Assembly (NCBI RefSeq): GCF_006345805.1
Contig: NC_043003.1
Span: 51,646,001-51,710,000, forward strand
Reading direction: 5' to 3'
Length of the DNA: 64,000 nt
Source of the DNA: Octopus sinensis
Taxonomy: Eukaryota
Shown here one piece after another: positions 1,326 to 64,000 of the stretch (its first letter is position 1; every line of letters begins with the position of its first letter). The notes beneath the pieces are model-generated. The model was not told where the DNA came from, ran no database searches, and saw nothing but the letters and a program-made list of their open reading frames with translations. Both the position numbers and the translations under genes were made by a program.

Positions 1326-3264
1326 GTGCCGGTGGAACGTAAAAAGCACCAACCGATCGTGGCTGTTGCCAGCCTCCCGTGGCATGTAAAAAGCACCCAC
1401 TACACTCACGGAGTGGTTGGCGTTCGGAAGGGCATCCAGCTGTAGAAACACTGCCAGATTAGACTGGACTGGCACAGCCTTCTGGCTTCCCAGACCCCGG
1501 TCGAACCGTCCAACCCATGCTAACATGGAAAACGGATGTTAAACGATGATGAGGATCTTTTAAAACAAATTTCAGAAGGTAAATCACTGAATGATGATTT
1601 GAGGACATTTGTTCCAGTAATAATTTCAAAAGTTTTTCAAGAGAAGAGATGCAAAGTTGGTAAGCAACAGTAAGTTACAACAAAGGTAACCTGTTTAAAA
1701 GAGCACTAAGGAAAACTGATTCAAGGTAAAATGAACACTTTAGTCCCACTACAAACAGCCTCCCTAGTACTGGTGACAGGATAAAATACACACAATACGC
1801 ACAGTAGTTGTGCATGATGACAGGAAGGGCATCCAGCTTTAAAAACTAGGCCAAAAGATGTAGCAAATCTTTTTATTTGCAGCATGTGTCAAGATGACAA
1901 TATTTCAGCAGGTACCAAGATCTTTTAAGGACTTGTTCAAATGACGCTAGTAGGGGAAAAAAAGATGATTAGGAGGATGACAATAATGATGATGATGATA
2001 ATGAAGTTGATGATAGAGAAAGTTGTGATATGTTGGTGTATACAGTTGAGAATGGGAGAGCCCAATACGTGGTTGCATAGTATAAACTTTATTCATATCA
2101 TATTTTCTACTTAAGGTTTCTTTTTTCTGACTGCCGGATGAAGTTGTGTGGGTTCGCATTTCACAGACACTAACTTCGACAGGTTGGACATTTGATTTCT
2201 GTCTTTTTTGTAGGGTTCTCTATGGCCAGCTACATGTACTATGGTCGTTACCTGACTGTGGGACAAATGGAAGGGTTTAACAATCAGTTCAGGGCTCTGG
2301 ATTGAAGAAGAACAACAGGAAACCTCCAGAAAATAAAGACTTCCTTACTTGCCAGTCCTTTTTGGCAGTCCTACAGCTGGAAATGGATTAATGTCTTTGT
2401 GGGGAAAAATTGCACTCAGCACCATCAAGGGAAGCAAGAAAAATGGCATGTATATATAGTGACACTTGTCTTCTCCAAACAGTTATTTACATACCAATCT
2501 ACAACTAAAGTTGCACATAAAAGATTAGAACATACAATTATTCAAGTGGAGAAGGAATAAATGTCTGACATTAAGACAGCACTGATTGAAGGTGTGTCTG
2601 AGTAAATGTATTTGTGTGTGTGTGTGCATGCATGAATTGGTATGTGTAAGAAGACAAGGCATAAAGGAGGGCAAAAAAAAAAATAAACGGAATGAGGAAA
2701 GAAAAGAGGGAAAGAGAGAAATACAGAGAGAGAGAGAGAGAGATGGAGAGACACAAAGAAATAAAGACAGAGGAGTATGAGGTTGAGTTCTCACATGATA
2801 AAATCATTGTTACTAGAGTCTTTGTTACACAAGATCCAGGTCAGCGTTGATCTAGCAGGCATATTGCTCTACTGAAGATGTGAGCAAAAGAAACAGGTAA
2901 AAGTCATCACATTATAGCCTATATTATGAGCTATAAAACTGCTTCAACTGCGCTTGGAGAATTTTTTTAAAAACTTGAATGGGTTCTCTGAAAAATAAGA
3001 AAGCAATGAAAGAAATATGAATTACATTAGAAGAAAAACATATGATTTTGCTTAAGCACAGCAATAGTAATAATGAGTTGTTAGAACTCAATATACTTAT
3101 GCTTTAGAGTAAAGTGTTAGGCAGGTACATTAATTAATAAATGACAAAAGAATGGGAATCATATAATCACCTTCACTAGTTTTTAGGTGTTTCTGCTATA
3201 AGAAACAGAACTAACTGCTTGAGCAACTACCTATAGCTTCCTTGGAGCCATTAAAAAGAAGTTT

Positions 3265-5141: not shown

Positions 5142-5185
<44 letters not shown>

Positions 5186-6114
5186 CATATACATATATAT
5201 ATATATACAAAGTAAATCTACGGATAACAACAGGTAATTGAAACTGTGCTAGTTTCAATTCAGTTTTTACTCATCATCCATTTTTACATTTTGTACAATT
5301 TCTCCATTATATGTATATATCAATATGTATGTGAAATTGTGGGTGCATGTTTTGCATAGTTACAGCTGTACACTTTGGGAAGATGGTTGCAAAAGATAAC
5401 AGGAGGAAAAAAAAGTTTGCAATGATGTAGCAAAGGGAAGCTGAATGCACATTTCCTGATAGTAAAAGTACTGCTCTGAAAAGCTGGAGGAGGCAATACA
5501 GTGGGAAAGTGTCAAAATCATTCTGATTTCCAGTCAATAGCTGATAAAAGGAATGTCCTAACCCATACCAGCATGGAAAACGGACAGATGTACATAGATC
5601 TTTATGTACATGCCGGTACGCCACGTCAGATAGTTTGAGAAGTACTGTTCTAGAGGTTAGGTGTGTTGGGCTCACAATTGTGGTTTCATTTCCTGTTGCT
5701 TTAGTCTATCTAGCTGAAATGAATACATGCCTAGTGCTAGTCTAGACCTCTTAGCTTCAAGGTGTCATTTCCTAGGTATTCTGTTGGTTGAGGGTTGGGA
5801 GTAACAAATAGGTGTCTATGCTTATGGCTACATAAATGCCTAAAAGAATTAGGGAAACATACTACATGCTACCAAGTCATCTCCTAGTCTGAGTGACAGC
5901 TTAGTAGTTATATATATATACTCATACAAACAAACACCCACCCCTAAAATACACAGTTTGTTTATACCAGGAAGCTGCACCAGGTTCCAGTCTGATCTGG
6001 CAGTTTCTGCAGCTAGATGCCCTTCCTAATGCCAACCACTCCGTGAGTGTAGTGGGTGCTTTTTACATGCCACCGGCACAGGGGACAGAGGAGGCTGGCA
6101 ACGTCCATGATCGG

Positions 6115-6206
<92 letters not shown>

Positions 6207-6225: not shown

Positions 6226-6311
6226 CTAACTGAATTTTGATGTTGGCTTTTTTTTCGGTATGGCTGGCTGTTCTCGTGTTCTTATCACAACATCTTCATA
6301 GGGATTCGATT
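6226..6311 (-). CDS. THEMIS-like: Terminal coding exon of the THEMIS-like gene (E|SNPYEDVVIRTREQPAIPKKKPTSKFS*)
   Basis: Acceptor ctttgtatcttaaatgtctattccag|AA, phase 1 matching the exon 3 donor. 86 nt ending in TAG at 6228-6226. Encodes YEDV and PAIPKK motifs. Too short for the ORF track. Confidence 0.68.
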
Positions 6312-13238: not shown

Positions 13239-13487
13239 CTGTATCAGAAATCTGGCCAGATGATGTCCTTGTGATGTAGACATTTGGCTGTGTGGTGGAA
13301 GTCCTGTTTGAAAGGGAAGGATAGTCACCAGTTGGTGTTGTTGATGCATTTGATGCAGTAGCTGGTGTAGTAGTGGATGTAGTAGTTGATGTAGTTGGAA
13401 TAGGAGTTGGTGCAGAAATTGATGCAGTAGTTAGCATTGGAGTTGTTAAAAGATTGTCGATTCTGATATTTTCATAAATGTTGAAAT
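13239..13487 (-). CDS. THEMIS-like: Coding exon 3 of the THEMIS-like gene (D|FNIYENIRIDNLLTTPML...Thr/Ser-rich...QPNVYITRTSSGQISDT)
   Basis: Acceptor tttttgttttttgttttag|AT and donor CAG|GTAAGC are both strong. The 249 nt run phase 1 to phase 1, compatible with exon 2, and the frame is open. Confidence 0.78.
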
Positions 13488-19376: not shown

Positions 19377-19437
<61 letters not shown>

Positions 19438-25204: not shown

Positions 25205-25262
<58 letters not shown>

Positions 25263-25297
25263 AGAGAGTTTACGAAAAAACAAAAGATATATATATA

Positions 25298-25467
25298 TAT
25301 TGGCCTGCTCGCTTAGGCAGCGGGGTGGCATCATTCGATATATATATATATATATCACGTGACGTGACCGACCAATCTATCAGATGTAGTTACACATCGC
25401 TGGTCACAATGCGTTCGCATTGTTTTAGCCTTCGAATGATGCCACCCCGCTGGCTAAGCGAGCAGGT

Positions 25468-25472
<5 letters not shown>
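25298..25472. mobile_element. Small MITE with about 41-bp TIRs inside a (TA)n tract
   Basis: tattggcctgctcgcttaggcagcggggtggcatcattcga pairs with tcgaatgatgccaccccgctggctaagcgagcaggtcaata. Confidence 0.75.
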
Positions 25473-25515
<43 letters not shown>

Positions 25516-25521
25516 GTATAT

Positions 25522-25558
<37 letters not shown>

Positions 25559-25589
25559 TGTGTATTTATATATATATATATATACTCTT

Positions 25590-25935
25590 TTACTTGTTTC
25601 AGTCATTTGACTGTGGCCATGCTGGAGCACCGCCTTTAATCGAGCAACTCGACCCCGGGTCTTATTCTTTTGTAAGCCCAGTACTTATTCTATCGGCCTC
25701 TTTGCCGAACCGCTTAGTAATGGGGACATAAACACACCAGCATCGGTTGTCAAGCGATGTTGGGAGGGGACAAACACAGACACACACACACACATATATA
25801 TATATATACATATATACGACGGGCTTCTTTCAGTTTCCGTCTACCAAATCCACTCACAAGGCTTTGGTCGGCCTGAGGCTATAGTAGAAGACACTTGCCC
25901 AAGGTGCCATGCAGTGGGACTGAACCCGGAACCTT
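25590..25935 (+). mobile_element. Representative tandem of SINE-like families B and C (the same pairing recurs at approx. 13810-14195, 15755-16150, 16965-17380, 47110-47630)
   Basis: B: tttacttgtttcagtcatttgactgtggccatgctggagcacc... C: gggcttctttcagtttccgtctaccaaatccactcacaaggctttgg... The two are separated by (CA)n/(TA)n tracts. Confidence 0.85.
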
Positions 25936-25962
25936 GTATATGTATGTATATATGTATGTATG

Positions 25963-26001
<39 letters not shown>

Positions 26002-26279
26002 CAAAATATATATACTTTATTTAAAGCAGCAGAAAATTCAACAAAACCTGTTACTCTGAGTTTCCCGTTGCCGTTCATTGGACAGTTTTTGCTAGAATAT
26101 ATATATATACGAATTGAGATAGGGGTTGTAAATGCAACCCTCCATGGGATAACATATATCCAATATACTGCAAGTGAAGTACCCAACAAAGTTAATACAT
26201 AAATGTTAAGGATTGTGATGCAATCAATTCATTTACTGTTATCTTGTATATATACTGTTATCTTGTATATGTATGTGTA

Positions 26280-26316
<37 letters not shown>

Positions 26317-26982
26317 GTATATATGGGGCAAGTGAACTCGAAATTGAACCAAATTTGATGACTGGCACCCGTGCCTGTGGAGCGTTAACAGCTCCATCCG
26401 AGTAGGATTACTGCTTGGCTTCTGGTATTAGGAAGGGTATCCAGCTGTGGAAGCTCTGCCAGATCAGATTGGAACCTGGCAAAGCCATCTGGTTTGCCAG
26501 TCCTCAGTCAAATCGTCCAACCCATGCTAGCATGGAAAGCGGTCGTTAAATAATGATGACGATGATATATATATATATAATATATATATATATACACACA
26601 CACTGTGATGATGACAATGATATATATACACACACTGTGATGATGACGATGATATATATATACACACACTGTGCTTGAGGAGACCTACTGAGTCAAGTAC
26701 ATCAACATCAAAAATTCAAATGGAAATTGTAGTTGTGATACCTGTGCCAGTGGCACATAAAAAGCACCCACTACACCCATGGAGTGGTTGGCATTAGGAA
26801 GGGCATCAAGCTGTAGAAACACTGCCAGATCAGACTGGAGCCTGGTGCAGCCTCCTGGCTTTCCAGACCTCGGTCGAACCGTCCAACCCATGCTAGCATG
26901 GAAAACGGACGTTAAACGATGATGATGATGATGATATATATATATTTGTGTATATATATATATATTTGTGTGTATGTATATA

Positions 26983-27678: not shown

Positions 27679-30600
27679 TGATAAATAAAAATATATGCAT
27701 ACATACAAACATATATGTACGTACCTACATCTACATGTATATATACATGCATATATAAATAATTGTACGTGAGTACAGGACACCACAACAAGACATAGAA
27801 ACGGGAAAAACAAAAAAACAAAAACAAGAAAACGAAAAACAAAAAACAAGAAAACGAAAAAAACAGTTACAGGACAAGCTACACAAGGAAAAAACCCATA
27901 TATATACATATATATACATATATATATACATATATATATAGGTATCTTTTATTTACCTGTAATCAGTCTTCCTTCATTCAATGTTAGATTTTAGTTATGT
28001 AATCCAGTCTGAACATAAATGTCTGTATCTATTATATACCTTTTTTTTTTTTCACATATTCTTACTCATTGTGTGTGTGTGTGTGTGCATGCATGTATTC
28101 CTTTAGGTTAAATGTAGTGATATTTATTTAAACAAAATTACCACAATGAATTCCCCTTGAGATATATGATAAATTTTATTCATATTATAAGCACAATTAT
28201 TCCTCACCATATACATAGTACACACTGTTGCAAGAGATGTACCAATGAACTTGCTCTTTGAGTGGTTGTTTTGAACATTGGCTGAAGTGATGGTAGTGGT
28301 GGTGGTGGTGGTGGTGGTGATGGTAGTAGTGCTTTTCTTTTTTCTGATAATAGTATCAGAAAAATACTCTATTAGTGACACACCAGGGAGTGGTATTTGC
28401 TGTGATAATAGTGCTATAGAAAATGGCAGGGAGTGGTATTTTCTCCAATGGCAGTGCAATAGGAAATACTGTTGTTGTAGTACAGTATGGAGTTTTGTTT
28501 GCTTTCATTTCACTGTCATAGAAGGTTCTGACTTGACCGATAAAAGCGAATGGGTTCAGTATGAAATGTCTAGCAGCACCATAGTAATTTTGATTTATCA
28601 CAGACTGTAACTAAAGATACTACAGCAATTTGGGGTGGTACAAATAGAAATGTGTCAGCTCCTGCAACTGATTCTTAGAAGACAAGTGTTGGTAAAAAAA
28701 AACCCAAACTTGCTATCTTCAATATGGTTACTGTGTCGGTTACCGTGTCTATCCTCACTTGTGGTAGTTAATGTCCGGTAATGACTGAAAGAGTACAATT
28801 GCAAAAACAAGAAGCCAAAATAAGGTTCTTTCAAGGGACCTCTGGAGTTATGTTATTTGATAGGATGCATAGCTCAAAGATCAGGGAGTCTCTCCAGATC
28901 AAACTGCTACTTCTTAACATTGAGAGGCCACATCTCTAATACAATAGAAATGTGATTAGAATATCACACGAAAGAATCACAAGGCAGATTCTTCAAGCCA
29001 ACCAACTGGCAGGAGACCTTAGAACAAGATGGTTGTATAATGTCCATAATCTCAGCTGGTCACATTTGAAAATCCAACCAGAAAGTGTAATGACAGTTGC
29101 TTCTGCAGGCACTTTACGGAGGAGGTGCCGAAAGACTCAACCCCACCAACCCTCCCAGGGAAAGCAGAGAAGATGGGTGGATGGACAAAGTGAACCTAGG
29201 GACATAACAACAACTTACAGTGTCACAGGTGTATGTGGCTATATCACAGTAATTTGAATGACTAATGACAATGCTACAAATTACTGTAAATCATTGTCAT
29301 TGTCGTCGTCGTTTAACGTCTGTTTTCTGTGCTAGCACGGGTTGGACGGTTTGACCGAGGTCTAGGAAACCAGGAGGCTGCACCAGGCTCCAGTCTGATC
29401 TGGCAGTGTTTCTACAGCTGGATGCCCTTCCTAACGCCAACCACTCTGTGAGTGAAGTGGGTGCTTTTTATGTGCCACCAGCACAGGTGCCAGGGGAGGC
29501 TGGCAGCAGCCACAATCGGTTGGTGCTTTTTACGTGCCACCGGCACAGAAGTCAGTCAAGGTGGCGCTGGCATCGGCCATATTAGGATGGTGCTTTTTAC
29601 GTACCACCGCCACAGGTATAACAACTACAATTTCCATTTGATATTTATTCTGATGTTGATGTACTTGACACAATAGGTCTCCTCAAGCACAGCAGATCAC
29701 TCTACGATCCAAGGTAAGCACAGCAGGTCGTTCTGTAATCCAAGGTACTTTTGATGGGCTGGGGCTATGTGAAATTGGTGCAGGAAACAGCCATGAACTC
29801 ACATTATTTGTGATGTCTTTGCAGTCACAGCATATCTCCAGAGATCTCGCTCTTTTGTCATTGCCTCAGAAAATAATTAGGCTTCATCATTTGTTGTTTA
29901 AGGCATCCTTAAAGGATGCATTCAGATTTCTCTGTCAAATGCAATAATTACTTATTCATATTGTTTTGAATTAATTATGCATTATCTTGTAGCTTCAAGA
30001 TATTAATGATATGATTGTTTAGTTTTAGAATGACATTATAAGGTAGGTGTGAGAATCCAGGTCTGAACATAAAATATGTAGACTATTTGGGCCAGTTATG
30101 GCCGGTTTAAATACCAACGGGTTAAGCTGCTTTGTTGAACTATCTATTATCTTTTATTACCTCCACCTTAGCGTAGGTGGGAGTATTGTTTTTCAGTCAT
30201 ATTTGTTTGTCCGTGGACAAGATATCTCAAGAACCGCTGGATGGATTCACATGAAACTTTCAGAGATATTTGGCCTTGTGACTGGCATGAACTGATTAGA
30301 CTTAGGGATCAATCCAGTATTGTATAAAGATTCTGGATTATTTTCCGTTTTTTTTATACTTAATTTTTGAGAGTGGTTGGGTTCATTTTTAGTATTCTCA
30401 TTTGTGAGAGCACTTGAGTTTATTTCAGACATTCTCAATTTAAAAATCATCTCTGGCTAATCCCTGAGAGGACATTGGTGTTGCTTTGGCAGAAGTTTGC
30501 ACTGAGTGCTCTTATTTGTTTTAGTCCTTAGGTCACAACCTATTTGGGACACAGCCTTGAAAGATTTACTTAAACAAATCAACACCAATACTTATTTTTT

Positions 30601-36624: not shown

Positions 36625-37255
36625 ATAATGATGAGATTCATACAATCATAAAATTTCTTAAATCATAATTTCTCCCAGTATTAAGATTTCTCTCAATCAT
36701 AAGATTTTTTTCCAAATGTAAGATTCCAGACAAATCATATGACTTTATACATCATAAAACTTCATGCAGACAATATAATTTCATGTAATTCTAAGCAAAC
36801 ATAATATTGACTCTATACAATCATAAAATATCTTCCACTAATAACATTTGCCCAATCATAAGAATTCATATAAATCATGTAAATTCATGCAAAGTTTTCA
36901 TGTAGTCATAAAATTTCATGCAAATCTTAAAATTTCATGCAGCCATAAAATTTAATACAAATCATAAATTTTCGTTTAAATAAAAGATTTCCTGTAGTTA
37001 TTTCATTTCATACTTAACCATATTTTATGCAATCATAAGATTTAATGCAATCATAAATTTCTAGGATTTCAAGTGATCATGAAATTTGAAACAAATCATG
37101 AAATGTTACACAAATCATAGGATTTCATGCAGTTATAAGATTTCATACAAATCATAAAGTATCATGCAAATCATAACAATTCATACAACCATAAGATTTC
37201 ATGCAAACATAGGATTTTATAGCTTCATATGATTTCATGCAATTATAAAGTAATT
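36625..37255. repeat. Degenerate minisatellite, unit about 20-22 bp (consensus approx. ATCATAAGATTTCATGCAA)
   Basis: Recurrent atcataa(g/a)atttcat(g/a)caa units across about 630 bp. Confidence 0.75.
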
Positions 37256-41232: not shown

Positions 41233-41283
<51 letters not shown>

Positions 41284-42302
41284 GTACATATAAGTTAATT
41301 AGAGGATATATTAACCTCTTAAAGGGATGATTACATCCAATAAAATGCTGGTTCTATGCCTAATATTTTGGGGTAATAAAATTTCCCTACATCAATAGGT
41401 ATATATTAAGCATATAATCAGTAATCAATTGACAGAAAAAAAAGAAAATGGAGGGTTGAAAGTTAATAATTATTTATTTATATATTGATAATTCTTACTT
41501 CCTACAGCTGTTTCCATTTGCGCTCATTAAATAAATTACAAATTTATACTTTAAATTTGCATTTATAAGATATGAGCAAAATATCAAGAAAAAAGATAAA
41601 TATTAAAAGATTACATGTTGACTTCTTAGTTCATACCAGTAGACTGATGATATTTTGCTCATATCTTATAAATGCAAATTTAAAGCATAAATTTATAATT
41701 TATAATGGAAATAGCTATAAGAAGAAAGAATTATCAATTTATTAATAAATAATTATTAACTTTCAACTTTCCATTTTCTTTTCTTCTAATAATTGAATAC
41801 TGATTATGTATATCTACATTAGCTGGCCCTGTACCATAAAAAAATGATGGCTAATTGGCATATTTTATATATAAATAAGGATGGTAAATCAAATTAATAC
41901 ACTTGTCAATGTTATCTAGTGGTTGTCTTTTGAGATGTAACAACAATCATCGTTTGTTACTGAAAGAATGCTGATTCACACATACAAACATTCACATACT
42001 TCCCTTGTACATGCACATACATACACACATATACTCACTTGAAGTTTAAACACTGTTTGATGTTTTTTTTTCAGCATTGAATGTTCATCATCCCAATTCC
42101 ATTGCTTGCATGCACGCGTGCAAACACACACACAAACATTCACATACCTCCGTTTTACATACACACATACATATTCTCACAGAGTTAAAACGCTTCCACT
42201 ACCAGCTTGCCATCATCCCTTCCTTCTTTATTCATCTATCACCCCTTCCCTTCTTGTTCATTCATATGTTGTGATGGAGAAAAACACAAGGGTATTATTA
42301 TA

Positions 42303-47327: not shown

Positions 47328-48313
47328 ATCGACCCCAGGACTTTGTAAGCCTAGTACTTATTCAATTGGTCTCTTTTTCCAAACCACTAAGTTTCAGGGA
47401 CGTAAACACACCATCATCGGTTGTGAAGTGATGGTGGGGGACAAACATGGACACACAAACACACACACATGTAGGCTTCTTTCAGTTTCTATCTACCAAA
47501 TCCACTCACAAGGCTTTGGTTGGCCCGAGGCTATAGTAGAAGACACTTGCCCAAGATGCCACACAGTAGGACTGAACCTAGAGCCATATGGTTGATAAGC
47601 AAGCTACTTACCACACAGCCATGCCTGCGCTTGTGATTGCAAATTTTGTGAGAGAGTATAGTCAATTATCTCAACCTCAGTACTTAACTATATTTTATTT
47701 TATTGACTTTTTTATTTTATTTTATTGATTTTATTTGAAATCAAATTCTATGATTGACATCTGTGCTAGTGGAGCACTAAGAGCTCCATCCGAGCGTGAT
47801 CATTTGCCAGAGCAACTGACTAGCTTCTGTGCTGGTGGCACATAAAAAGCACAATTCGAGCGTGATCATTACCAGCGTCGGTTTACTGGCACTTGTGCCG
47901 GTGTCACGTGAAAGAACATTTGAGCGAGGTCATTACTAGTGCCGCTGGACTAGCTCCTGTGCAGGTGGCACATAAAAAACACCATTTGAGCGTGGTTTTT
48001 GCCAGTACCACCTGACTGGCCCTTGTGCCAGTGACACGTAAAAGCACCTATACACTCTCGGAGTGGTTGGCGTTAGGAAGGGCATCCAGCTGTAGAAACT
48101 CTGCCAGATCAGATTGGAGCCTGGTGCAGCCATCTGGTTCACCAGTCCTCAGTCAAATCGTCCAATCCATGCTAGCATGGAAAGTGGACGGTTAAACGAT
48201 GATGATGATGATGACTCTGGAATGAAGAAATGCAAAATTGACCTCAGTGGGATTTGAACTCTAAATGAAAATAACAACATAAAAAAGTGTTTTTTTTTTA
48301 TCTTGGAGCATAC

Positions 48314-48495
48314 CTGATTCAGCCCTCCTGACCTCTGATCTTATAAGACCCTGTGATGGATATTTTTTCTTGCGCATCCGTGAAAAGCTTTTCCGCAATT
48401 TGTTTGCTTTATTGACGCTGAATGTTGATAAAGATCTCCTCATGTTGGACAGCTGTGGTACTATATTCAAATCGCGTCTCCATACAGATCTTGAA
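48314..48495 (-). CDS. THEMIS-like: Coding exon 2 of the THEMIS-like gene (S|SRSVWRRDLNIVPQLSNMRRSLSTFSVNKANKLRKSFSRMRKKKYPSQGLIRSEVRRAES)
   Basis: Acceptor gttattgttgtctacag|T and donor CAG|GTATGC. The 182 nt run phase 2 to phase 1, which fits the phase-2 donor of exon 1. The frame is open and the sequence is non-repetitive, with several CpGs. Confidence 0.78.
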
Positions 48496-54075: not shown

Positions 54076-54110
54076 ATCTAAAATAACAATAATAATAACA
54101 ATGTCAATAC

Positions 54111-56056
54111 CTCATATGGTGTTGAGCGGAATCTCTCAAACAGTCCATACTTTGAAAACGGAGGTGGTAAGTTTCCATATAAAAATACGTTTCCTCAAAT
54201 AGTTCTTCAGCATCCAAGGCTATCCGTTCAACTGGAGAAGTAAAGTCAGTTGGCAAGACAGTATCCTGTTTAAGATCTAGAACCATTTTATATCGACTAG
54301 GAATTTCAATACACACTTGATTTGAAAATGTCGATTCTGTTTGGCTATCTTTTGTGTTAGACACAACCACAACTGTGTCTCGAACAAAATTTTCCAAAGT
54401 TAGCACTGTGTCTGCACTTACTGTTGGGTAGAAATCCCCGGCTTCTACATCCAATGGTAATTTTGGCCGACGGTAGAATAATTCAGACACGAACCATCTT
54501 TCTCTGTCTTCGTTTGCAATCATTTCAATTAAATCAATTTCTAAATCCACAGGTATCTTCAGTTTCTCATATTTTCCACGAGAATTTAGTTTCTCACATC
54601 TTAGCACTTTACATTCCATTTTATAATCGCCACCTCCGAATTTATAGACAACGGTCTGGAAGTTTGGAATTCGGATTATATCTCCTTTATTCAAACTAAT
54701 TGGTTTCGGAAAGTCAGTGGCCACATCTTCCAATACCTGCAGCTCACAGCCAGCCTTGCAAATACTTAATTCAGAGACATTCCGAAATCTCCGTGGTAAT
54801 GCAGAGAAACTTTTATAAAGATTAGGTCCAATTATGAAAAATCTGTCTTCCGTGCGCGCAAGAATTTTATCGATATGTTCCACTCTTCGAACAACTATTT
54901 GTGACTTTGGTTTAAGATAAGTGGCGAATTCAGAAGGAAGGTCGGGGTAAGATACAATTTGGGCTAAGACTGGGAAGAAAATTAGTGGTCGAGTATGTTC
55001 CGATGCCACTTCCCATAATGTACGACGGGCTTTGTAATTTTTGGGATGTTCATAATCTGGAATGGATATACATTTAACAAGCATGTCAGAACTAAGAGGA
55101 ATGAGCCACCTTACGTCTGATTCGCCATTCCGTGTGGGATCAGCATCAACAGTATCAGTAGGGTCACTAGTATGATAAACCTGGACAAAAATCTCAGGAA
55201 TGTCCATATAAATAATATTCCTTCCAGATAATTTCGCAGAACGAAAACTATTCCGTTGATTAGCGAAATATGATTCAGACATGTCGATCGAATCGTCGTT
55301 GAAAAATGGGTCGTCTGTGAATACTTTCGAGGGGGAATCAATTCCCACACGTACGATGCTGTCTTGGTAATTACTGTGATCAACCAATTCATCAGCTTGC
55401 CAAAGATATCTGGGCATGCGATTCGCTTCCAGAAGTTGTTCCACAGTGTAAGTGGTATTCGAATCAACAACGTAAGAAAAATCACCCTTACATGACCATG
55501 GCAGTTCCATAATTCGACCGTCTTGGTGTTGGCATTGTAAATATTTCCCGAAATATCCATCGCGAACGATTTTCAGAAACTTGAATGTATCTCCAGCCTC
55601 AAAATTGTTTTTCTGTATTTCTCCAATGAAACTCTGTTGCGAGAAGCACGACGAACAGTTCGCTTTAAATAATGGCGGTGATACCTTTATTAAATCATTT
55701 ATCGTCTCGTAGATCGCGTCCGGCTCTTGTTCGTCATGTGGAGGTGAAAGAACAACGTACCGTGCTGGATAGTCTATAGGTACTTCAATAGTATCGTGGT
55801 CCGTGACCGGAGTCTTGGCCGACGGATCACAGTGCGTGTCCCACTCGCATTCATCGTCTGCCTTACAAGGTGTCAACAACACTCTGGGGATAACAGTTTT
55901 ATACAAACGCAGCCACTGACCTTCTTCGACAGCAGGAGTCGTCTGGCAGTTACCTGGTGACACAACAAATACAGTTTGTGGAAGATCAAAATTGTCCAGG
56001 AAACTTTTCAGTGTAAACAGCTCGTTGTCTTGTAACGACTCATCCGAGTCCGCCAT
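54111..56056 (-). CDS. THEMIS-like: Coding exon 1 (648 codons + 2 nt) of a THEMIS-like protein with two tandem CABIT modules
   Basis: Uninterrupted 650-aa ORF starting aaaaATGG. Module 1 has LPQTVFV, IEVPIDYPARY, YETINDLI, F.AGD.F and LQCQHQDGRIMELPWSCKGDF, matching the CABIT core phi-X-C-X7-phi-X-LP-phi-X3-GXF. Module 2 lines up, from memory, with vertebrate THEMIS CABIT2: PKSQIVVRRVEHIDKILA, FFIIGPNLYKSFSALPRRF, VLRCEKL, LPLDV, CIEIP, AEELFEETYFYM. A phase-2 donor AG|GTATTG lies at 54111/54110. Confidence 0.88.
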
Positions 56057-60769: not shown

Positions 60770-63317
60770 TGGAAAACTTGTTAGCAGATCTAGTGGAGTT
60801 GCAAAAACAGCAACAACAGATGTGACAGCAACAAATGCTACAAGTAATGAAGTTGGTAACAAAACCTGAAAAATCATCAGACCATGTAGCAAATTCAATA
60901 AATGAATTAAATATGACCCAAAAGAAGGAATCACTTTCGAGGCATATTACTGAAGATTTGAACAAATTTCTGAAAAAGAATGCCAAGACTGGACAGATGA
61001 AATAAGAATGCATCTAATTCTGAGGAAACTGGCAACAACAGAGCAAGAGAAATACTGTAACTTTATATTGCCTAAAAAAGTTTCTGACAAAAAATTTCAT
61101 GGACACAATTAACATTTCATGTAAAATGTTCAGTGGGAAAACATTGTTATTCAACATGTTGGAAGTGTTTGAATATGGAGAAAAGTGATGATGAAAACTT
61201 TACCACATATACAGGTAGAGTGAACAGAGATTTAAACTGGATAAAACTTTACATGATAATGATATGATTGAACCATTATGTAAACCTCCTCAAGGAATGA
61301 GAAGACGCAGGCTGGAAAGCGGAACATTTTCCAATCGAAGTCGGATGTAGAGGGTTCGTTGGACACAGTGTGAGACGACTGTTGTTATTGCTAGGCCTAA
61401 CTCATTGTAAAGTCAATACCACCATGACTGATATCCAATCTACAGTGGAGAAGGCTAGCCACTGAATTTGGTTAAAAAGAGACGATGAGCGATGGCTAGA
61501 AGATGCCGTTGAGAGGTAGGCCCCGAAACGGTGCACATTCTCTCCTGATGACCCCATACACTTGCTGACTTCCAGTATACGGAGCTTTTGACTTGTAGCA
61601 CTTGCATTTGAAAGTTGTTTGCAAGACATCTGTAGACTCGTTCAAGTGCCTGATTTTTGCTCAGGGACTTACTGCTAGAAAGGATGCAGAAGAAAGAACA
61701 AAAATTCTTGCAAAGCTAGAAATGAACCAGGATATAACTCTCCAGAAATTGTCAGAAGAGTGCGGTATGATATTAAAAGTAAGACACGACACAGAAGAAA
61801 TCCAATGCAGGGATTGTTTACAGATAAAACCAGTGTGGAAGAATTGGAAGACGGATAAAGTGTGTCACAAAAAACATAATATACATCAGGAGATAAACCT
61901 ATGTATGGCATGTGGTGGCAGGCATCTGAGAAAAGAGTGCCTGTTCAAAAATGCAAAGTGTTTTTATTGTGGGAACACAGGACACATTCAAATAACACTG
62001 CAGAACTAAGATGATGAAAAATTGGACCAAACGGGAAAAAACAAAGTTTGTCATCAAATACAGAGGCAAATTGGTAAGCCAAAATTATTTAAATCAAATA
62101 AAGTAGCATATGGTGTTACAGGAAAGAAATTCTATTTCATTGGTGAATGTATTTGCAATGTAACTTTTCAAGGTGAAACGAAAAGGACAATCATTTATGT
62201 GTTGAAAAAATCATTAAACCTATTTGGTACAGAATGCTTGGAGTTATACAAAATGTGGGCTACCCCCATTAGTGTGTTCTGTGAAAATGTAGTTGGCTCA
62301 GTCAAAATTTTGAATGAGGTCAAGCAACTAAGACAAAAAATTAAAAAAATGTTTCCAAATGTGTTTTTGGAAGGATTAAGTTGTTGCACTAAAACAAAAG
62401 CAAGGATTGCAATAAAAGAAAAGGCAACACCCGTTTTTTGGCTCAAATGGAATGTGCCATTTGCAGCATTAGACCACATAAATAAAGAGCTGGAAAGACT
62501 AGAAAGTGTAAAAAAAACTGAAAATGTCAGCCATTCAGCACTGACAGTTTATGTAAAGGAAAAAATAATAAACTAAGAGTGTGTGCGAAGCCACATATTT
62601 ATGGTCAGAAATGTGCCAGAAGGAATCTGATGAGTTAAAATGCGTTTAACTTCAGACTTGTCACTTTACACACTTCGATCCAAAATTGGAGACAATACTG
62701 GCAACAGATGCTAGTAGGTGTCATACTTCTACACAAATGTAAAGATGGCAGTCAAAAGGCCATAGCTCATGCATTGTGGATGGTATTGACAGTGGAAAAC
62801 AGTACTGGGAAGGTGAAATTACAAAGTACATAGGAAAAATAATGTACAGGTTAAAAAGCAGGAAAGGTATTGAAAAAAGATAGAAACCAATTGAAGAAGT
62901 GATCCATAGAAAATGAACCAGACAGATTGGAAGAACCTGTGGAATGGCTGTATGAAACATTCCGGGTACCAACACCATTACAGGTTGTTGAACCCACATG
63001 TACAAGTGGAAGAAAAAGGAAAAACACAGAGTTCCTACAAATAAACATCAAAAAGAAAAAATATTGGAGGAGGGTGAATAAAGTAAAATTAAATTACTTA
63101 CTTCCTAAAGAAAAAAAAAACTAAAAGGGGAGATGTTGTAGTGAAAAATTGGTACACCCCTTCCCACATGACAAGTCAATTGTGTGACAGTCCAAGTCAG
63201 TCAGTAGTGGACATACAAGTAGTAACATACAAGTGGACAAGGAAACACATTATAACAAGATCACATAATTACCATTGACTAGAAATATCAATTTTATAGT
63301 GCTTTTGTAATTGTAAC
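60770..63317 (+). mobile_element. Decayed Ty3/gypsy LTR retrotransposon (gag, zinc knuckle, protease/RT start, putative 3' LTR)
   Basis: FKCLIFAQGLTARKDAE, CMACGGRHLRKEC, CFYCGNTGHIQ, NLFGTECLELY, FPNVFLEGL..CTKTKA. A polypurine tract aaaaggggaga is followed by tgttg...taaca (about 63132-63317). No matching 5' LTR found. Confidence 0.8.
61255..61629 (+). mobile_element. 3' fragment of a HERO-like RLE non-LTR retrotransposon nested in the gypsy gag
   Basis: AGWKAEHFPIEVGCRGFVGHSVRRLLLLLGL...VEKASH.IWLKRDDERW. Removing the segment restores gag ..LDK(L)TSVDSFKCLIF. ACAT lies at 61251-61254 and 61626-61629. Confidence 0.7.
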
Positions 63318-63791: not shown

Positions 63792-63846
<55 letters not shown>

Positions 63847-63849
63847 ATA

Positions 63850-63899
<50 letters not shown>

Positions 63900-63918
63900 A
63901 TATATGTATATATATATC

Positions 63919-63951
<33 letters not shown>

Positions 63952-64000
63952 ATATATATATGTATATATATATATATATATAATATATATAATATATATA

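What the first reader, a model, noticed from the sequence alone, without database searches (positions are those of the whole stretch)
54111..56056. Tandem-CABIT (THEMIS-architecture) protein in an invertebrate-type genome
Seen: one exon encodes two CABIT-like modules (aa about 13-330 and 345-632). Module 2 follows, from memory, the order and wording of vertebrate THEMIS CABIT2 motifs, ending in EELFEETYFYM (THEMIS EEITEEQYYMM). Established: THEMIS proteins are vertebrate lymphocyte signalling regulators with two CABIT modules, whereas GAREM and fly Serrano have one. Inference: a two-CABIT protein in a probable cephalopod, an animal without T or B cells, would suggest either that the tandem-CABIT phosphatase-regulating scaffold predates adaptive immunity or that it arose twice.
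Basis: partly seen in the sequence, partly recalled or inferred. Interest (0 to 1): 0.85.

Follow-up and report, generated by a model that had tools for sequence, protein, structure and literature searches.

The report
Octopus two-CABIT relative of THEMIS
An octopus gene encodes a protein with the same two-module (CABIT-CABIT) body as the vertebrate T-cell regulator THEMIS; unnamed relatives occur across molluscs and annelids, so this body plan is far older than lymphocytes, although the octopus protein lacks THEMIS's own Grb2-binding features.

Summary
A 650-codon ORF (54104-56056, minus strand) is exon 1 of a five-exon Octopus sinensis gene, LOC115214407 ('uncharacterized protein', 833 aa).

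Module 1 passes Pfam CABIT (55 bits). Module 2 alone is missed by Pfam. However, a cephalopod profile aligns module 2 end to end with solved human THEMIS CABIT2 (E 4.5e-8). Profile-profile E-values against CABIT2 are 1e-16 to 1e-19, versus 2.7e-5 against the protein's own module 1.

Unnamed two-module orthologues exist in four mollusc classes and in annelids (Capitella, Paralvinella). A module tree places THEMIS CABIT2 among the invertebrate second modules (73% bootstrap). THEMIS CABIT1 and CABIT2 never group together. This favours one ancient duplication over two independent ones.

THEMIS's Grb2-clamp features are absent in octopus: no PxRPxK motif follows module 2, and the R544/R545 hotspot is E/T. 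The tail instead carries YENI and YEDV tyrosine motifs and a PxxPxK motif.

The likely function, a phosphotyrosine-signalling adaptor that regulates an SHP-type phosphatase, is inferred and untested.

It is a new, undescribed member of a known family, of moderate interest.

The parts
54111..56056 (-). Coding exon 1 (aa 1-648 plus 2 nt of codon 649). It encodes both CABIT modules. ATG at 56056, GT donor at 54110-54109.
   Evidence: the spliced translation equals P0001 exactly.
55052..56020 (-). CABIT module 1 (aa 13-335). It contains cephalopod-specific, low-confidence insertions at about aa 225-280 and 297-315.
   Evidence: Pfam PF12736 55.2 bits on the N half alone. hhalign against THEMIS CABIT1: E 1.1e-10. 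Model confidence; alignment.
55478..55543 (-). Module 1 core motif YLQC(175)QHQDGRIMELPWSCKGDF. It fits the published CABIT core phiXCX7-26phiXLPphiX3GXF.
   Evidence: translation. Motif definition from PMC9250082. Invariant in four cephalopod sequences.
54113..55036 (-). CABIT module 2 (aa 341-648), of the CABIT2 type.
   Evidence: Profile against solved THEMIS 281-546: E 4.5e-8. hhalign against CABIT2: E 2.8e-19, 265 columns. pLDDT mostly above 90. No Pfam hit when scanned alone.
54542..54607 (-). Module 2 core VLRC(487)EKLNSRGKYEKLKIPVDL. C487 aligns with the buried Cys413 of THEMIS. The (L/I)P is kept; the GxF is lost.
54167..54214 (-). DAEELFEETYFYMETY, the start of the helix that ends module 2 (aa 621-649 in the model). 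It aligns with THEMIS EEITEEQYYMMRRY. Y624 corresponds to Y540. R544/R545 are replaced by E628/T629.
48314..48495 (-). Coding exon 2 (aa 649-709 plus parts of the split codons at both ends). It contains the basic, serine-rich patch NKANKLRKSFSRMRKKK (aa 677-693).
13239..13487 (-). Coding exon 3 (disordered Thr/Ser-rich tail). It contains NIYENI at 13465-13482 (Y714), a YxN motif.
   Evidence: The motif is identical in Argonauta.
6231..6311 (-). Coding exon 4. It contains NPYEDV (6289-6306, Y797) and PAIPKK (6250-6267, a PxxPxK motif).
   Evidence: Related N[LP]YE[DY][VI] motifs occur in Argonauta, chiton and Lottia tails.
2944..2987 (-). Coding exon 5 including the stop codon: the basic C-terminus (K)NPFKFLKKFSKRS.
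   Evidence: Nearly identical in Argonauta.

Best explanation
Shown: the region is exon 1 of an intact five-exon octopus gene. Its product has two tandem CABIT modules followed by a disordered, motif-bearing tail of about 185 residues. It belongs to an unnamed clade of two-module CABIT proteins present throughout molluscs and in annelids. Its second module corresponds specifically to THEMIS CABIT2. Its first module is a generic CABIT, closest to GAREM-like single CABIT domains and somewhat closer to THEMIS CABIT1 than to CABIT2.

Inferred from this: the tandem arrangement arose once, before protostomes and deuterostomes split, and vertebrate THEMIS proteins are its lymphocyte-specialised descendants.

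Inferred mechanism, by homology with THEMIS and GAREM: a non-enzymatic cytosolic adaptor in tyrosine-kinase signalling. The CABIT-CABIT body would dock on, and tune, the catalytic domain of the SHP-type phosphatase (the Corkscrew/PTPN11 orthologue). The tail would be tyrosine-phosphorylated at YENI (a Grb2/Drk SH2-type pYxN site) and YEDV. Together with PAIPKK, these sites would recruit SH2/SH3 adaptors on stimulation. This resembles GAREM rather than THEMIS, because the adjacent PxRPxK motif and the arginine hotspot that THEMIS uses to clamp the Grb2 C-terminal SH3 domain constitutively are missing.
For: Gene and identity.

Module 1 is a CABIT domain: and the core motif.

Module 2 is of the CABIT2 type:
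- PDB profile hit to 9i3p_B/9iaz_B/9uou_B, E 4.5e-8, collinear over 266 residues.
- Frog THEMIS (E 1.9e-6) and coelacanth THEMIS2 (E 2e-4) are recovered in a search of 1.84 billion proteins, and only through module 2.
- hhalign of mollusc, annelid and group-D module 2 against CABIT2: probability 98.8-99.2%, E 2.8e-19 to 1.2e-16. Against CABIT1: E 0.008, 4e-6 and 0.028.
- Isolated module 2 of annelid and bivalve-type orthologues passes Pfam CABIT at 28-61 bits.

Clade breadth: Lottia, Potamilus, Babylonia, Physella, Candidula, Liolophura, Capitella, Paralvinella. Module order is always M1 then M2, in about 35 representative proteins.

Single duplication: mollusc M1 against M2 gives only E 2.7e-5 and THEMIS CABIT1 against CABIT2 gives 0.019. 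The NJ module tree recovers the split {M2 + CABIT2} | {M1 + CABIT1 + GAREM-like} in 73/100 bootstraps, and THEMIS C1+C2 together in 0/100.

Fold: AlphaFold2 mean pLDDT 82.6, pTM 0.65, two all-beta modules and a terminal helix. The only structural neighbours are Lck/Fyn/Hck SH3 domains, as reported for the CABIT head in 10.1101/2024.10.01.616165.

Tail motifs and missing THEMIS sites. The site definitions come from PMC13381594.
Against: - No functional or expression data exist. Binding to SHP or Grb2 is extrapolated from vertebrate proteins that share about 20-26% identity.
- Pfam does not recognise octopus module 2 on its own.
- The preference of M1 for CABIT1 over CABIT2 is modest (scores 78.7 vs 62.1, 58.0 vs 47.9, 68.5 vs 50.2). 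Bootstrap support for the key split is 73% in a simple NJ tree with long branches.
- The THEMIS Grb2-contact residues, the adjacent PRS and Tyr34 are not conserved, so the partner set may differ.
- Short linear motifs (YxN, PxxPxK) arise easily by chance in disordered tails, and their conservation is shown only between Octopus and Argonauta, with looser matches in other molluscs.
- Direct superposition on THEMIS was not possible, because the Foldseek PDB copy held no THEMIS entry.
Confidence: 0.7

Rival explanations
1. Same protein family, different job. The lophotrochozoan tandem-CABIT protein is not an SHP/Grb2 adaptor. It would act like the fly CABIT protein Serrano, an apically enriched cytoplasmic partner of the planar-cell-polarity machinery, or have some other lineage-specific scaffolding role.
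For: The THEMIS Grb2 hotspot residues, the adjacent PRS and Tyr34 are absent. Serrano is an invertebrate family member with a developmental role that is neither immune nor Grb2-centred (PMC2776533). Identity to THEMIS is only about 20-26%.
Against: Every CABIT protein studied biochemically so far (THEMIS, THEMIS2, GAREM1/2) is reported to engage Grb2 and SHP phosphatases. The octopus tail carries a canonical pYxN-type site and a PxxPxK motif, both conserved in Argonauta. A related unnamed two-module protein, P0064, keeps RPPKP motifs almost identical to the THEMIS PRS.
Confidence: 0.22
2. Convergence. A single-CABIT ancestor was duplicated independently in lophotrochozoans and in vertebrates, so the shared two-module plan is analogous and not inherited.
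For: M1 is about as similar to GAREM-like single CABIT domains (E 1e-11 to 1e-16) as to anything else. Its preference for THEMIS CABIT1 over CABIT2 is modest. No named tandem protein from ecdysozoans or invertebrate deuterostomes was identified here.
Against: Independent duplications predict that each second module is closest to its own first module. Instead M2 matches CABIT2 at E about 1e-17 to 1e-19, against 2.7e-5 for M2 vs M1. THEMIS C1 and C2 never group in bootstraps, and CABIT2 nests within the M2 clade. The M2/CABIT2 alignment is collinear through the terminal helix.
Confidence: 0.05
3. Not a two-CABIT protein: the C-terminal half is an unrelated beta-rich domain; or the sequence is vertebrate contamination or an untranscribed relic.
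For: Pfam reports no CABIT hit for the octopus C-terminal half alone. No expression data were available.
Against: See for module 2. The gene sits on a 117.5-Mb octopus contig with octopus-type composition and repeats. The 833-codon frame is intact across five GT-AG exons. Mean column identity is 62-64% among four cephalopod sequences.
Confidence: 0.02

Closest known systems
Vertebrate THEMIS / THEMIS2 / THEMIS3
   Same: Two tandem CABIT modules in the same order. Module 2 aligns end to end with CABIT2, including the buried Cys (C413/C487), Y540/Y624 and the terminal helix. A disordered tail follows the modules. No catalytic domain is present.
   Different: Only about 20-26% identity. There is no PxRPxK proline-rich sequence directly after module 2. 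The Grb2 site-2 residues differ: R544/R545 become E/T, Y541 becomes F, E483 becomes N. F327 and Tyr34 lie in vertebrate-only insertions. Module 1 carries cephalopod-specific disordered insertions. The tail bears YENI/YEDV motifs. The animal has no lymphocytes.
GAREM1 / GAREM2 (FAM59A/B)
   Same: CABIT family. A long disordered tail with tyrosine and proline motifs, which in GAREM bind Grb2 and SHP2 after phosphorylation (literature). Invertebrate module 1 is the closest match of the GAREM-like CABIT+SAM proteins P0096 and P0045.
   Different: GAREM has one CABIT and a C-terminal SAM domain. The octopus protein has two CABITs and no SAM hit.
Unnamed lophotrochozoan 'CABIT domain-containing proteins' (e.g. 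Lottia gigantea LOTGIDRAFT_232294/V4AC98, Potamilus KAK3601481, Liolophura LOC135470818, Capitella CAPTEDRAFT_210308, Paralvinella LSH36_13g21002)
   Same: Orthologues or close paralogues: the same M1-M2 order, full-length profile matches with E 1e-41 to 1e-67 for the molluscs, and a shared tail tyrosine motif in molluscs.
   Different: 26-28% identity to octopus. Annelid and bivalve-type second modules remain recognisable to Pfam. Capitella and P0064 may carry a C-terminal SAM-like region, and P0064 carries RPPKP motifs.
Drosophila Serrano (Sano)
   Same: An invertebrate, cytoplasmic member of the CABIT/Themis family (PMC2776533).
   Different: Reported role in planar cell polarity and tracheal tube length.

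Membership tests
CABIT domain family (Pfam PF12736) | Score above the Pfam gathering cut-off (24 bits) | tested here: met
   Whole exon-1 product 71.7 bits; N-terminal half alone 55.2 bits.
CABIT domain family (Pfam PF12736) | Core motif phiXCX7-26phiXLPphiX3GXF with the conserved cysteine (definition in PMC9250082) | tested here: met
   Module 1: YLQC175QHQDGRIMELPWSCKGDF fits fully. Module 2 keeps C487 and (L/I)P but has lost GxF.
CABIT domain family (Pfam PF12736) | Two-subdomain fold: beta core with two extended strands plus an inserted SH3-like head | tested here: inconclusive
THEMIS family | Two CABIT modules in tandem | tested here: met
   Module 2 against solved THEMIS CABIT2: E 4.5e-8. 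hhalign: E 2.8e-19. Orthologous second modules pass Pfam. Octopus module 2 alone does not pass Pfam.
THEMIS family | Positional correspondence of modules (M1 to CABIT1, M2 to CABIT2) | tested here: met
   M2 to CABIT2 is strong. M1 to CABIT1 is preferred over CABIT2 in all three invertebrate groups, but only by 10-18 score units. Key tree split 73/100.
THEMIS family | Proline-rich sequence PxRPxK immediately after CABIT2 (Grb2 SH3C site 1) | tested here: not met
   None follows the helix in the four cephalopod sequences. The only PxxPxK (PAIPKK) lies about 160 residues downstream.
THEMIS family | Grb2 site-2 residues I181, E483, Y541, R544, R545 (R545 is the hotspot; PMC13381594) | tested here: not met
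   Octopus has T (at I181, from the alignment), N556, F625, E628 and T629.
THEMIS family | Basic nuclear-localisation patch inside CABIT2 (YKGKFKRRPREF) | tested here: inconclusive
   The aligned octopus segment YKSFSALPRRFRN is only partly basic. Basic runs occur in the tail instead.
THEMIS family | Direct binding to and regulation of SHP-1/SHP-2; constitutive Grb2 complex | not testable with these tools
   Requires biochemistry.
GAREM family | Single CABIT followed by a proline-rich region and a C-terminal SAM domain | tested here: not met
   Two CABIT modules; no SAM hit in P0001 at E up to 0.1.
GAREM family | Phosphotyrosine sites in the tail that recruit Grb2 SH2 and SHP2 | tested here: inconclusive
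   Motifs of the right type (Y714 ENI, Y797 EDV) are present and conserved in Argonauta. Phosphorylation and binding were not tested.

The most novel reading that the evidence does not exclude
The last common bilaterian ancestor already had a CABIT1-CABIT2 adaptor with a proline-rich SH3-binding motif and perhaps a C-terminal SAM domain. THEMIS would have arisen from it by losing SAM and gaining the Grb2 clamp. GAREM/Serrano-type 'single-CABIT' proteins would have arisen by losing module 2, or would still carry an unrecognised module 2. Tandem CABIT would then be the ancestral state of the whole family, and its original job the tuning of SHP/Corkscrew downstream of receptor tyrosine kinases. 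The octopus gene would be a tractable non-immune representative.
Probability: 0.3. Interest if true: 0.65.

Novelty: new member of a known kind. Interest (0 to 1): 0.5.

Why it matters
THEMIS is essential for T-cell selection, and its mechanism is still disputed (does it activate or inhibit SHP-1?). The papers I could read present its tandem-CABIT body through the vertebrate THEMIS proteins.

If the same two-module body, with module-by-module correspondence, exists across molluscs and annelids, then the scaffold was recruited into lymphocyte signalling and not invented for it. That gives the field natural 'variants' for separating what the CABIT-CABIT body does by itself from what the vertebrate-specific additions do (the Grb2 clamp and Tyr34).

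There is also a practical point. Pfam's CABIT model misses the second module in cephalopods, the limpet and the chiton. Domain counts in databases therefore understate how common the tandem form is, and 'single-CABIT' labels elsewhere deserve re-examination.

Tried and rejected
1. Pfam on the C-terminal half alone gave no CABIT hit. The whole protein scores about 16.5 bits more than the N half, so only a sub-threshold signal is present. I relied on profiles instead.
2. A single-sequence PDB search gave only alpha-crystallin hits at E about 0.1-0.3 over 58 residues. I rejected these as chance; they stayed non-significant with the profile.
3. The search for homologous proteins with the 44-sequence alignment returned only the four cephalopod proteins, because its word prefilter swamped the candidates. 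That search was wasted.
4. Foldseek against the PDB found no THEMIS entry and nothing at E up to 1e-3. The library ends 2026-04-08, and 9i3p/9iaz/9uou are evidently later. No superposition was possible, so I did not spend further fold searches.
5. The founding paper (Johnson et al. 2009, PMC2908989 / doi 10.1038/ni.1769) is not held. Whether it already mentioned invertebrate double-CABIT proteins could not be checked. Secondary sources say only 'single or double CABIT domains'.
6. Contig look-ups for P0003 and P0096 returned sample accessions without species. The taxa of 'group D2' (P0028/64, P0029, P0032, P0034, P0041, P0043, P0044) remain unknown. The one clue is that P0034 and a member of the annelid-type P0035 cluster are each recorded on a contig of identical length, 4,238,714 bp, which is probably the same contig.
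7. The SAM-like C-terminus in Capitella and P0064 scored Pfam SAM_1 19 bits (cut-off 23) and hhalign probability 52%. I left it as unconfirmed.
8. Rfam, the tandem-repeat scan and the other long ORF (62022-62576) gave nothing relevant.
Full report
**1. What is in the sequence.**
The minus strand carries a 650-codon ORF at 54104..56056. It is one of only two ORFs of 180 aa or more in the whole 64-kb, roughly 36% GC window. It is identical to the first 648 residues of an 833-aa protein, LOC115214407 isoform X1 ('uncharacterized protein') of Octopus sinensis, recorded on a 117.5-Mb contig.

The ORF's stop codon is intronic. Four further GT-AG exons (48495-48314, 13487-13239, 6311-6231, 2987-2944) complete a 2,502-nt coding sequence whose translation equals P0001 exactly. 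The gene spans at least 53 kb, with introns of up to 34.8 kb that hold only microsatellites and a short interspersed repeat. No Rfam family is present.

**2. Are there two CABIT modules?**
Pfam CABIT (PF12736, cut-off 24 bits) scores 71.7 bits on the exon-1 product and 55.2 bits on the N-terminal half alone. The C-terminal half alone gives nothing. Module 1 contains a perfect copy of the published core motif, YLQC175...MELPWSCKGDF.

Module 2 needed more sensitive tests:
- A profile of four cephalopod sequences, searched against all PDB chains, hit only THEMIS (9i3p_B, 9iaz_B, 9uou_B). Profile positions 363-632 aligned collinearly with THEMIS residues 281-546, which is the whole of CABIT2 as redefined structurally (267-550). 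The domain E-value was 4.5e-8.
- The same profile, run exhaustively over 1.84 billion representative proteins, recovered frog THEMIS (E 1.9e-6) and coelacanth THEMIS2 (E 2e-4), again only through module 2.
- Isolated second modules of annelid (41-61 bits) and bivalve-type (28-40 bits) orthologues pass Pfam CABIT. Those of cephalopods, the limpet and the chiton do not.

Octopus module 2 is therefore a divergent copy of a domain that Pfam recognises in its orthologues.

An AlphaFold2 model built from a 44-sequence alignment is confident (mean pLDDT 82.6, pTM 0.65; module 2 mostly above 90). It shows two all-beta modules, long strands at 386-401 and 551-567, and a terminal helix at 621-649. This matches the published description of CABIT2 as a core with two extended strands, an SH3-like head and a C-terminal helix. 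Foldseek found no significant PDB neighbour. The only hits with fair probability were Lck, Fyn and Hck SH3 domains, the same partial similarity the crystallographers reported. The Foldseek library ends before the THEMIS entries were released, so no superposition was possible.

**3. The family it belongs to.**
The exhaustive search gave 43 hits. With separate HMMs for the two octopus modules, about 35 representative proteins show module 1 followed by module 2. Neither HMM ever hits the other position.

Named members are:
- Molluscs: Lottia gigantea, Potamilus streckersoni, Babylonia areolata, Physella acuta, Candidula unifasciata and the chiton Liolophura sinensis.
- Annelids: Capitella teleta and Paralvinella palmiformis.

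All carry only generic names ('uncharacterized', 'hypothetical', 'CABIT domain-containing protein'). Similarities follow the species tree: Argonauta 78%, two other cephalopod-like sequences about 50%, other molluscs 26-28%. That pattern, together with the chromosome-scale contig, excludes vertebrate contamination.

**4. One duplication or two?**
Profile-profile comparisons with clean domain boundaries gave:

| Comparison | E-value | Note |
|---|---|---|
| Mollusc / annelid / group-D module 2 vs THEMIS CABIT2 | 2.8e-19 / 3.2e-18 / 1.2e-16 | probability about 99%, 229-265 columns |
| The same module 2 sets vs THEMIS CABIT1 | 0.008 / 4e-6 / 0.028 | |
| Module 1 sets vs THEMIS CABIT1 | 1.1e-10 / 8.4e-8 / 1.4e-9 | |
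| Module 1 sets vs THEMIS CABIT2 | 5.7e-8 / 4.1e-6 / 1.3e-6 | |
| Mollusc M1 vs mollusc M2 | 2.7e-5 | |
| THEMIS CABIT1 vs THEMIS CABIT2 | 0.019 | |

A bootstrapped neighbour-joining tree of 46 individual modules recovers the split {all second modules + THEMIS CABIT2} | {all first modules + THEMIS CABIT1 + GAREM-like CABITs} in 73/100 replicates. THEMIS CABIT1 and CABIT2 never group together (0/100).

Independent duplications would make each second module closest to its own first module, and the opposite is seen. The M2/CABIT2 correspondence is strong. The M1/CABIT1 correspondence rests on position plus a modest but consistent score preference. Two unnamed CABIT+SAM (GAREM-like) proteins are closest to invertebrate module 1 (E 1e-11 to 1e-16).

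**5. What is and is not shared with THEMIS at residue level.**
I used the interface defined by cryo-EM and mutagenesis (PMC13381594) and a cross-phylum alignment.
- Conserved: the buried cysteine (C413/C487, also in all named molluscs and annelids) and Y540 (Y624).
- Not conserved: Y541 (F625), the site-2 arginines R544/R545 (E628/T629; R545 is the functional hotspot) and E483 (N556).
- F327 lies in a vertebrate-only insertion.
- No PxRPxK sequence follows the helix in cephalopods.
- Tyr34, the reported SHP1/LCK-regulated site, lies in a THEMIS-only insertion.

Instead, the roughly 185-residue tail has:
- NIYENI (Y714; the pYxN type preferred by the Grb2 SH2 domain, from established knowledge);
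- NPYEDV (Y797);
- PAIPKK (PxxPxK);
- two basic patches.

All of these are conserved in Argonauta. Related N[LP]YE[DY][VI] motifs occur in the chiton and Lottia tails.

**6. How it most likely works.**
Shown: the gene structure, the two-module architecture, the module correspondence, the breadth of the clade, and the presence or absence of the motifs above.

Inferred: every CABIT protein characterised so far (THEMIS, THEMIS2, GAREM1/2) is a non-enzymatic adaptor that engages Grb2 and SHP-family phosphatases, with the THEMIS CABIT modules binding the phosphatase domain. I therefore propose that the octopus protein is a cytosolic adaptor of tyrosine-kinase signalling. Its CABIT-CABIT body would tune the SHP/Corkscrew orthologue. 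Its tail would recruit SH2/SH3 adaptors after phosphorylation, in a GAREM-like inducible mode. This would replace the constitutive THEMIS clamp on the Grb2 C-terminal SH3 domain, whose determinants are missing.

I give about 0.85 to the identity and evolutionary statement and about 0.4-0.5 to the mechanism. The main rival for function is a Serrano-like, non-Grb2 role.

**7. Novelty.**
The CABIT family has been known since 2009 as metazoan, 'from cnidarians to mammals', with 'single or double CABIT domains'. In the papers I could read, the double form is exemplified only by vertebrate THEMIS1-3. Five full-text searches found no description of tandem-CABIT proteins in invertebrates. The founding paper is not held, and the proteins themselves sit in public databases under generic names.

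The finding is thus a new, undescribed member, or more precisely a new clade, of a known kind. It is not a new kind of system. Many lymphocyte signalling parts are already known to predate adaptive immunity, so the surprise is moderate. The value lies in giving the THEMIS field a non-immune, evolutionarily distant tandem-CABIT protein, and in showing that the Pfam model under-counts second modules.

Noticed in passing
P0064 (aa 536-600 and 690-773) and P0093 Capitella teleta (aa 860-940); not in the window: Some tandem-CABIT proteins outside the cephalopods look like THEMIS/GAREM hybrids. P0064 has two RPPKP motifs almost identical to the THEMIS PRS (PPPRPPK). Both P0064 and Capitella end in a shared region that is weakly SAM-like (Pfam SAM_1 19 bits, cut-off 23; hhalign probability 52% against a verified SAM).
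   Followed up: partly
window 6289-6306 and 13465-13482; tails of P0002, P0007, P0071, P0005: A tyrosine motif N[LP]YE[DY][VI] recurs in the disordered tails of octopus, Argonauta, chiton and Lottia proteins. A basic, serine-rich patch (octopus NKANKLRKSFSRMRKKK, window exon 2) has loose counterparts in bivalve, limpet and annelid tails. These may be phosphorylation/docking or localisation signals.
   Followed up: partly
window about 55110-55380 (aa about 225-315 of module 1): Cephalopod module 1 carries lineage-specific insertions absent from other molluscs, annelids and THEMIS. They coincide with the low-confidence segments of the model (pLDDT below 50 at 253-275 and 310-313).
   Followed up: partly
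Pfam scans of isolated second modules: Pfam PF12736 misses the second CABIT module in cephalopods, Lottia and the chiton, while detecting it in annelids and bivalve-type proteins. Database domain counts therefore understate tandem CABIT proteins, and 'single-CABIT' annotations elsewhere may be unreliable.
   Followed up: partly
window 29460-29617 and 47787-47996: Tandem arrays of 2.5-3 copies of a 64-67-nt unit lie in introns 2 and 1. The two consensus units share a segment of about 26 nt in opposite orientation (TGCTTTTTAyGTGCCACCkGCACAGG), suggesting copies of one interspersed (SINE-like) repeat family.
   Followed up: no
window 5146-5207, 6116-6161, 19382-19432, 25207-26324, 41233-41292, 63797-64000; also 36896-37248: Many (TA)n/(AT)n microsatellites, including more than 100 copies running off the window end, and a degenerate 18-19-nt minisatellite at about 36.9-37.2 kb. 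All are intronic or intergenic.
   Followed up: no
window 62022-62576 (+): The only other ORF of 180 aa or more (184 aa, TTG start), upstream of the gene. It has no Pfam hit and is probably not a gene.
   Followed up: partly
P0034 and P0067 (the P0035 cluster); not in the window: A 'group D2' tandem-CABIT protein and an annelid-type one are each recorded on an ENA contig of identical length (4,238,714 bp), probably the same contig. If so, at least one lophotrochozoan-like genome carries two linked paralogues. The second modules of group D2 have lost the conserved cysteine (F/M/I).
   Followed up: no
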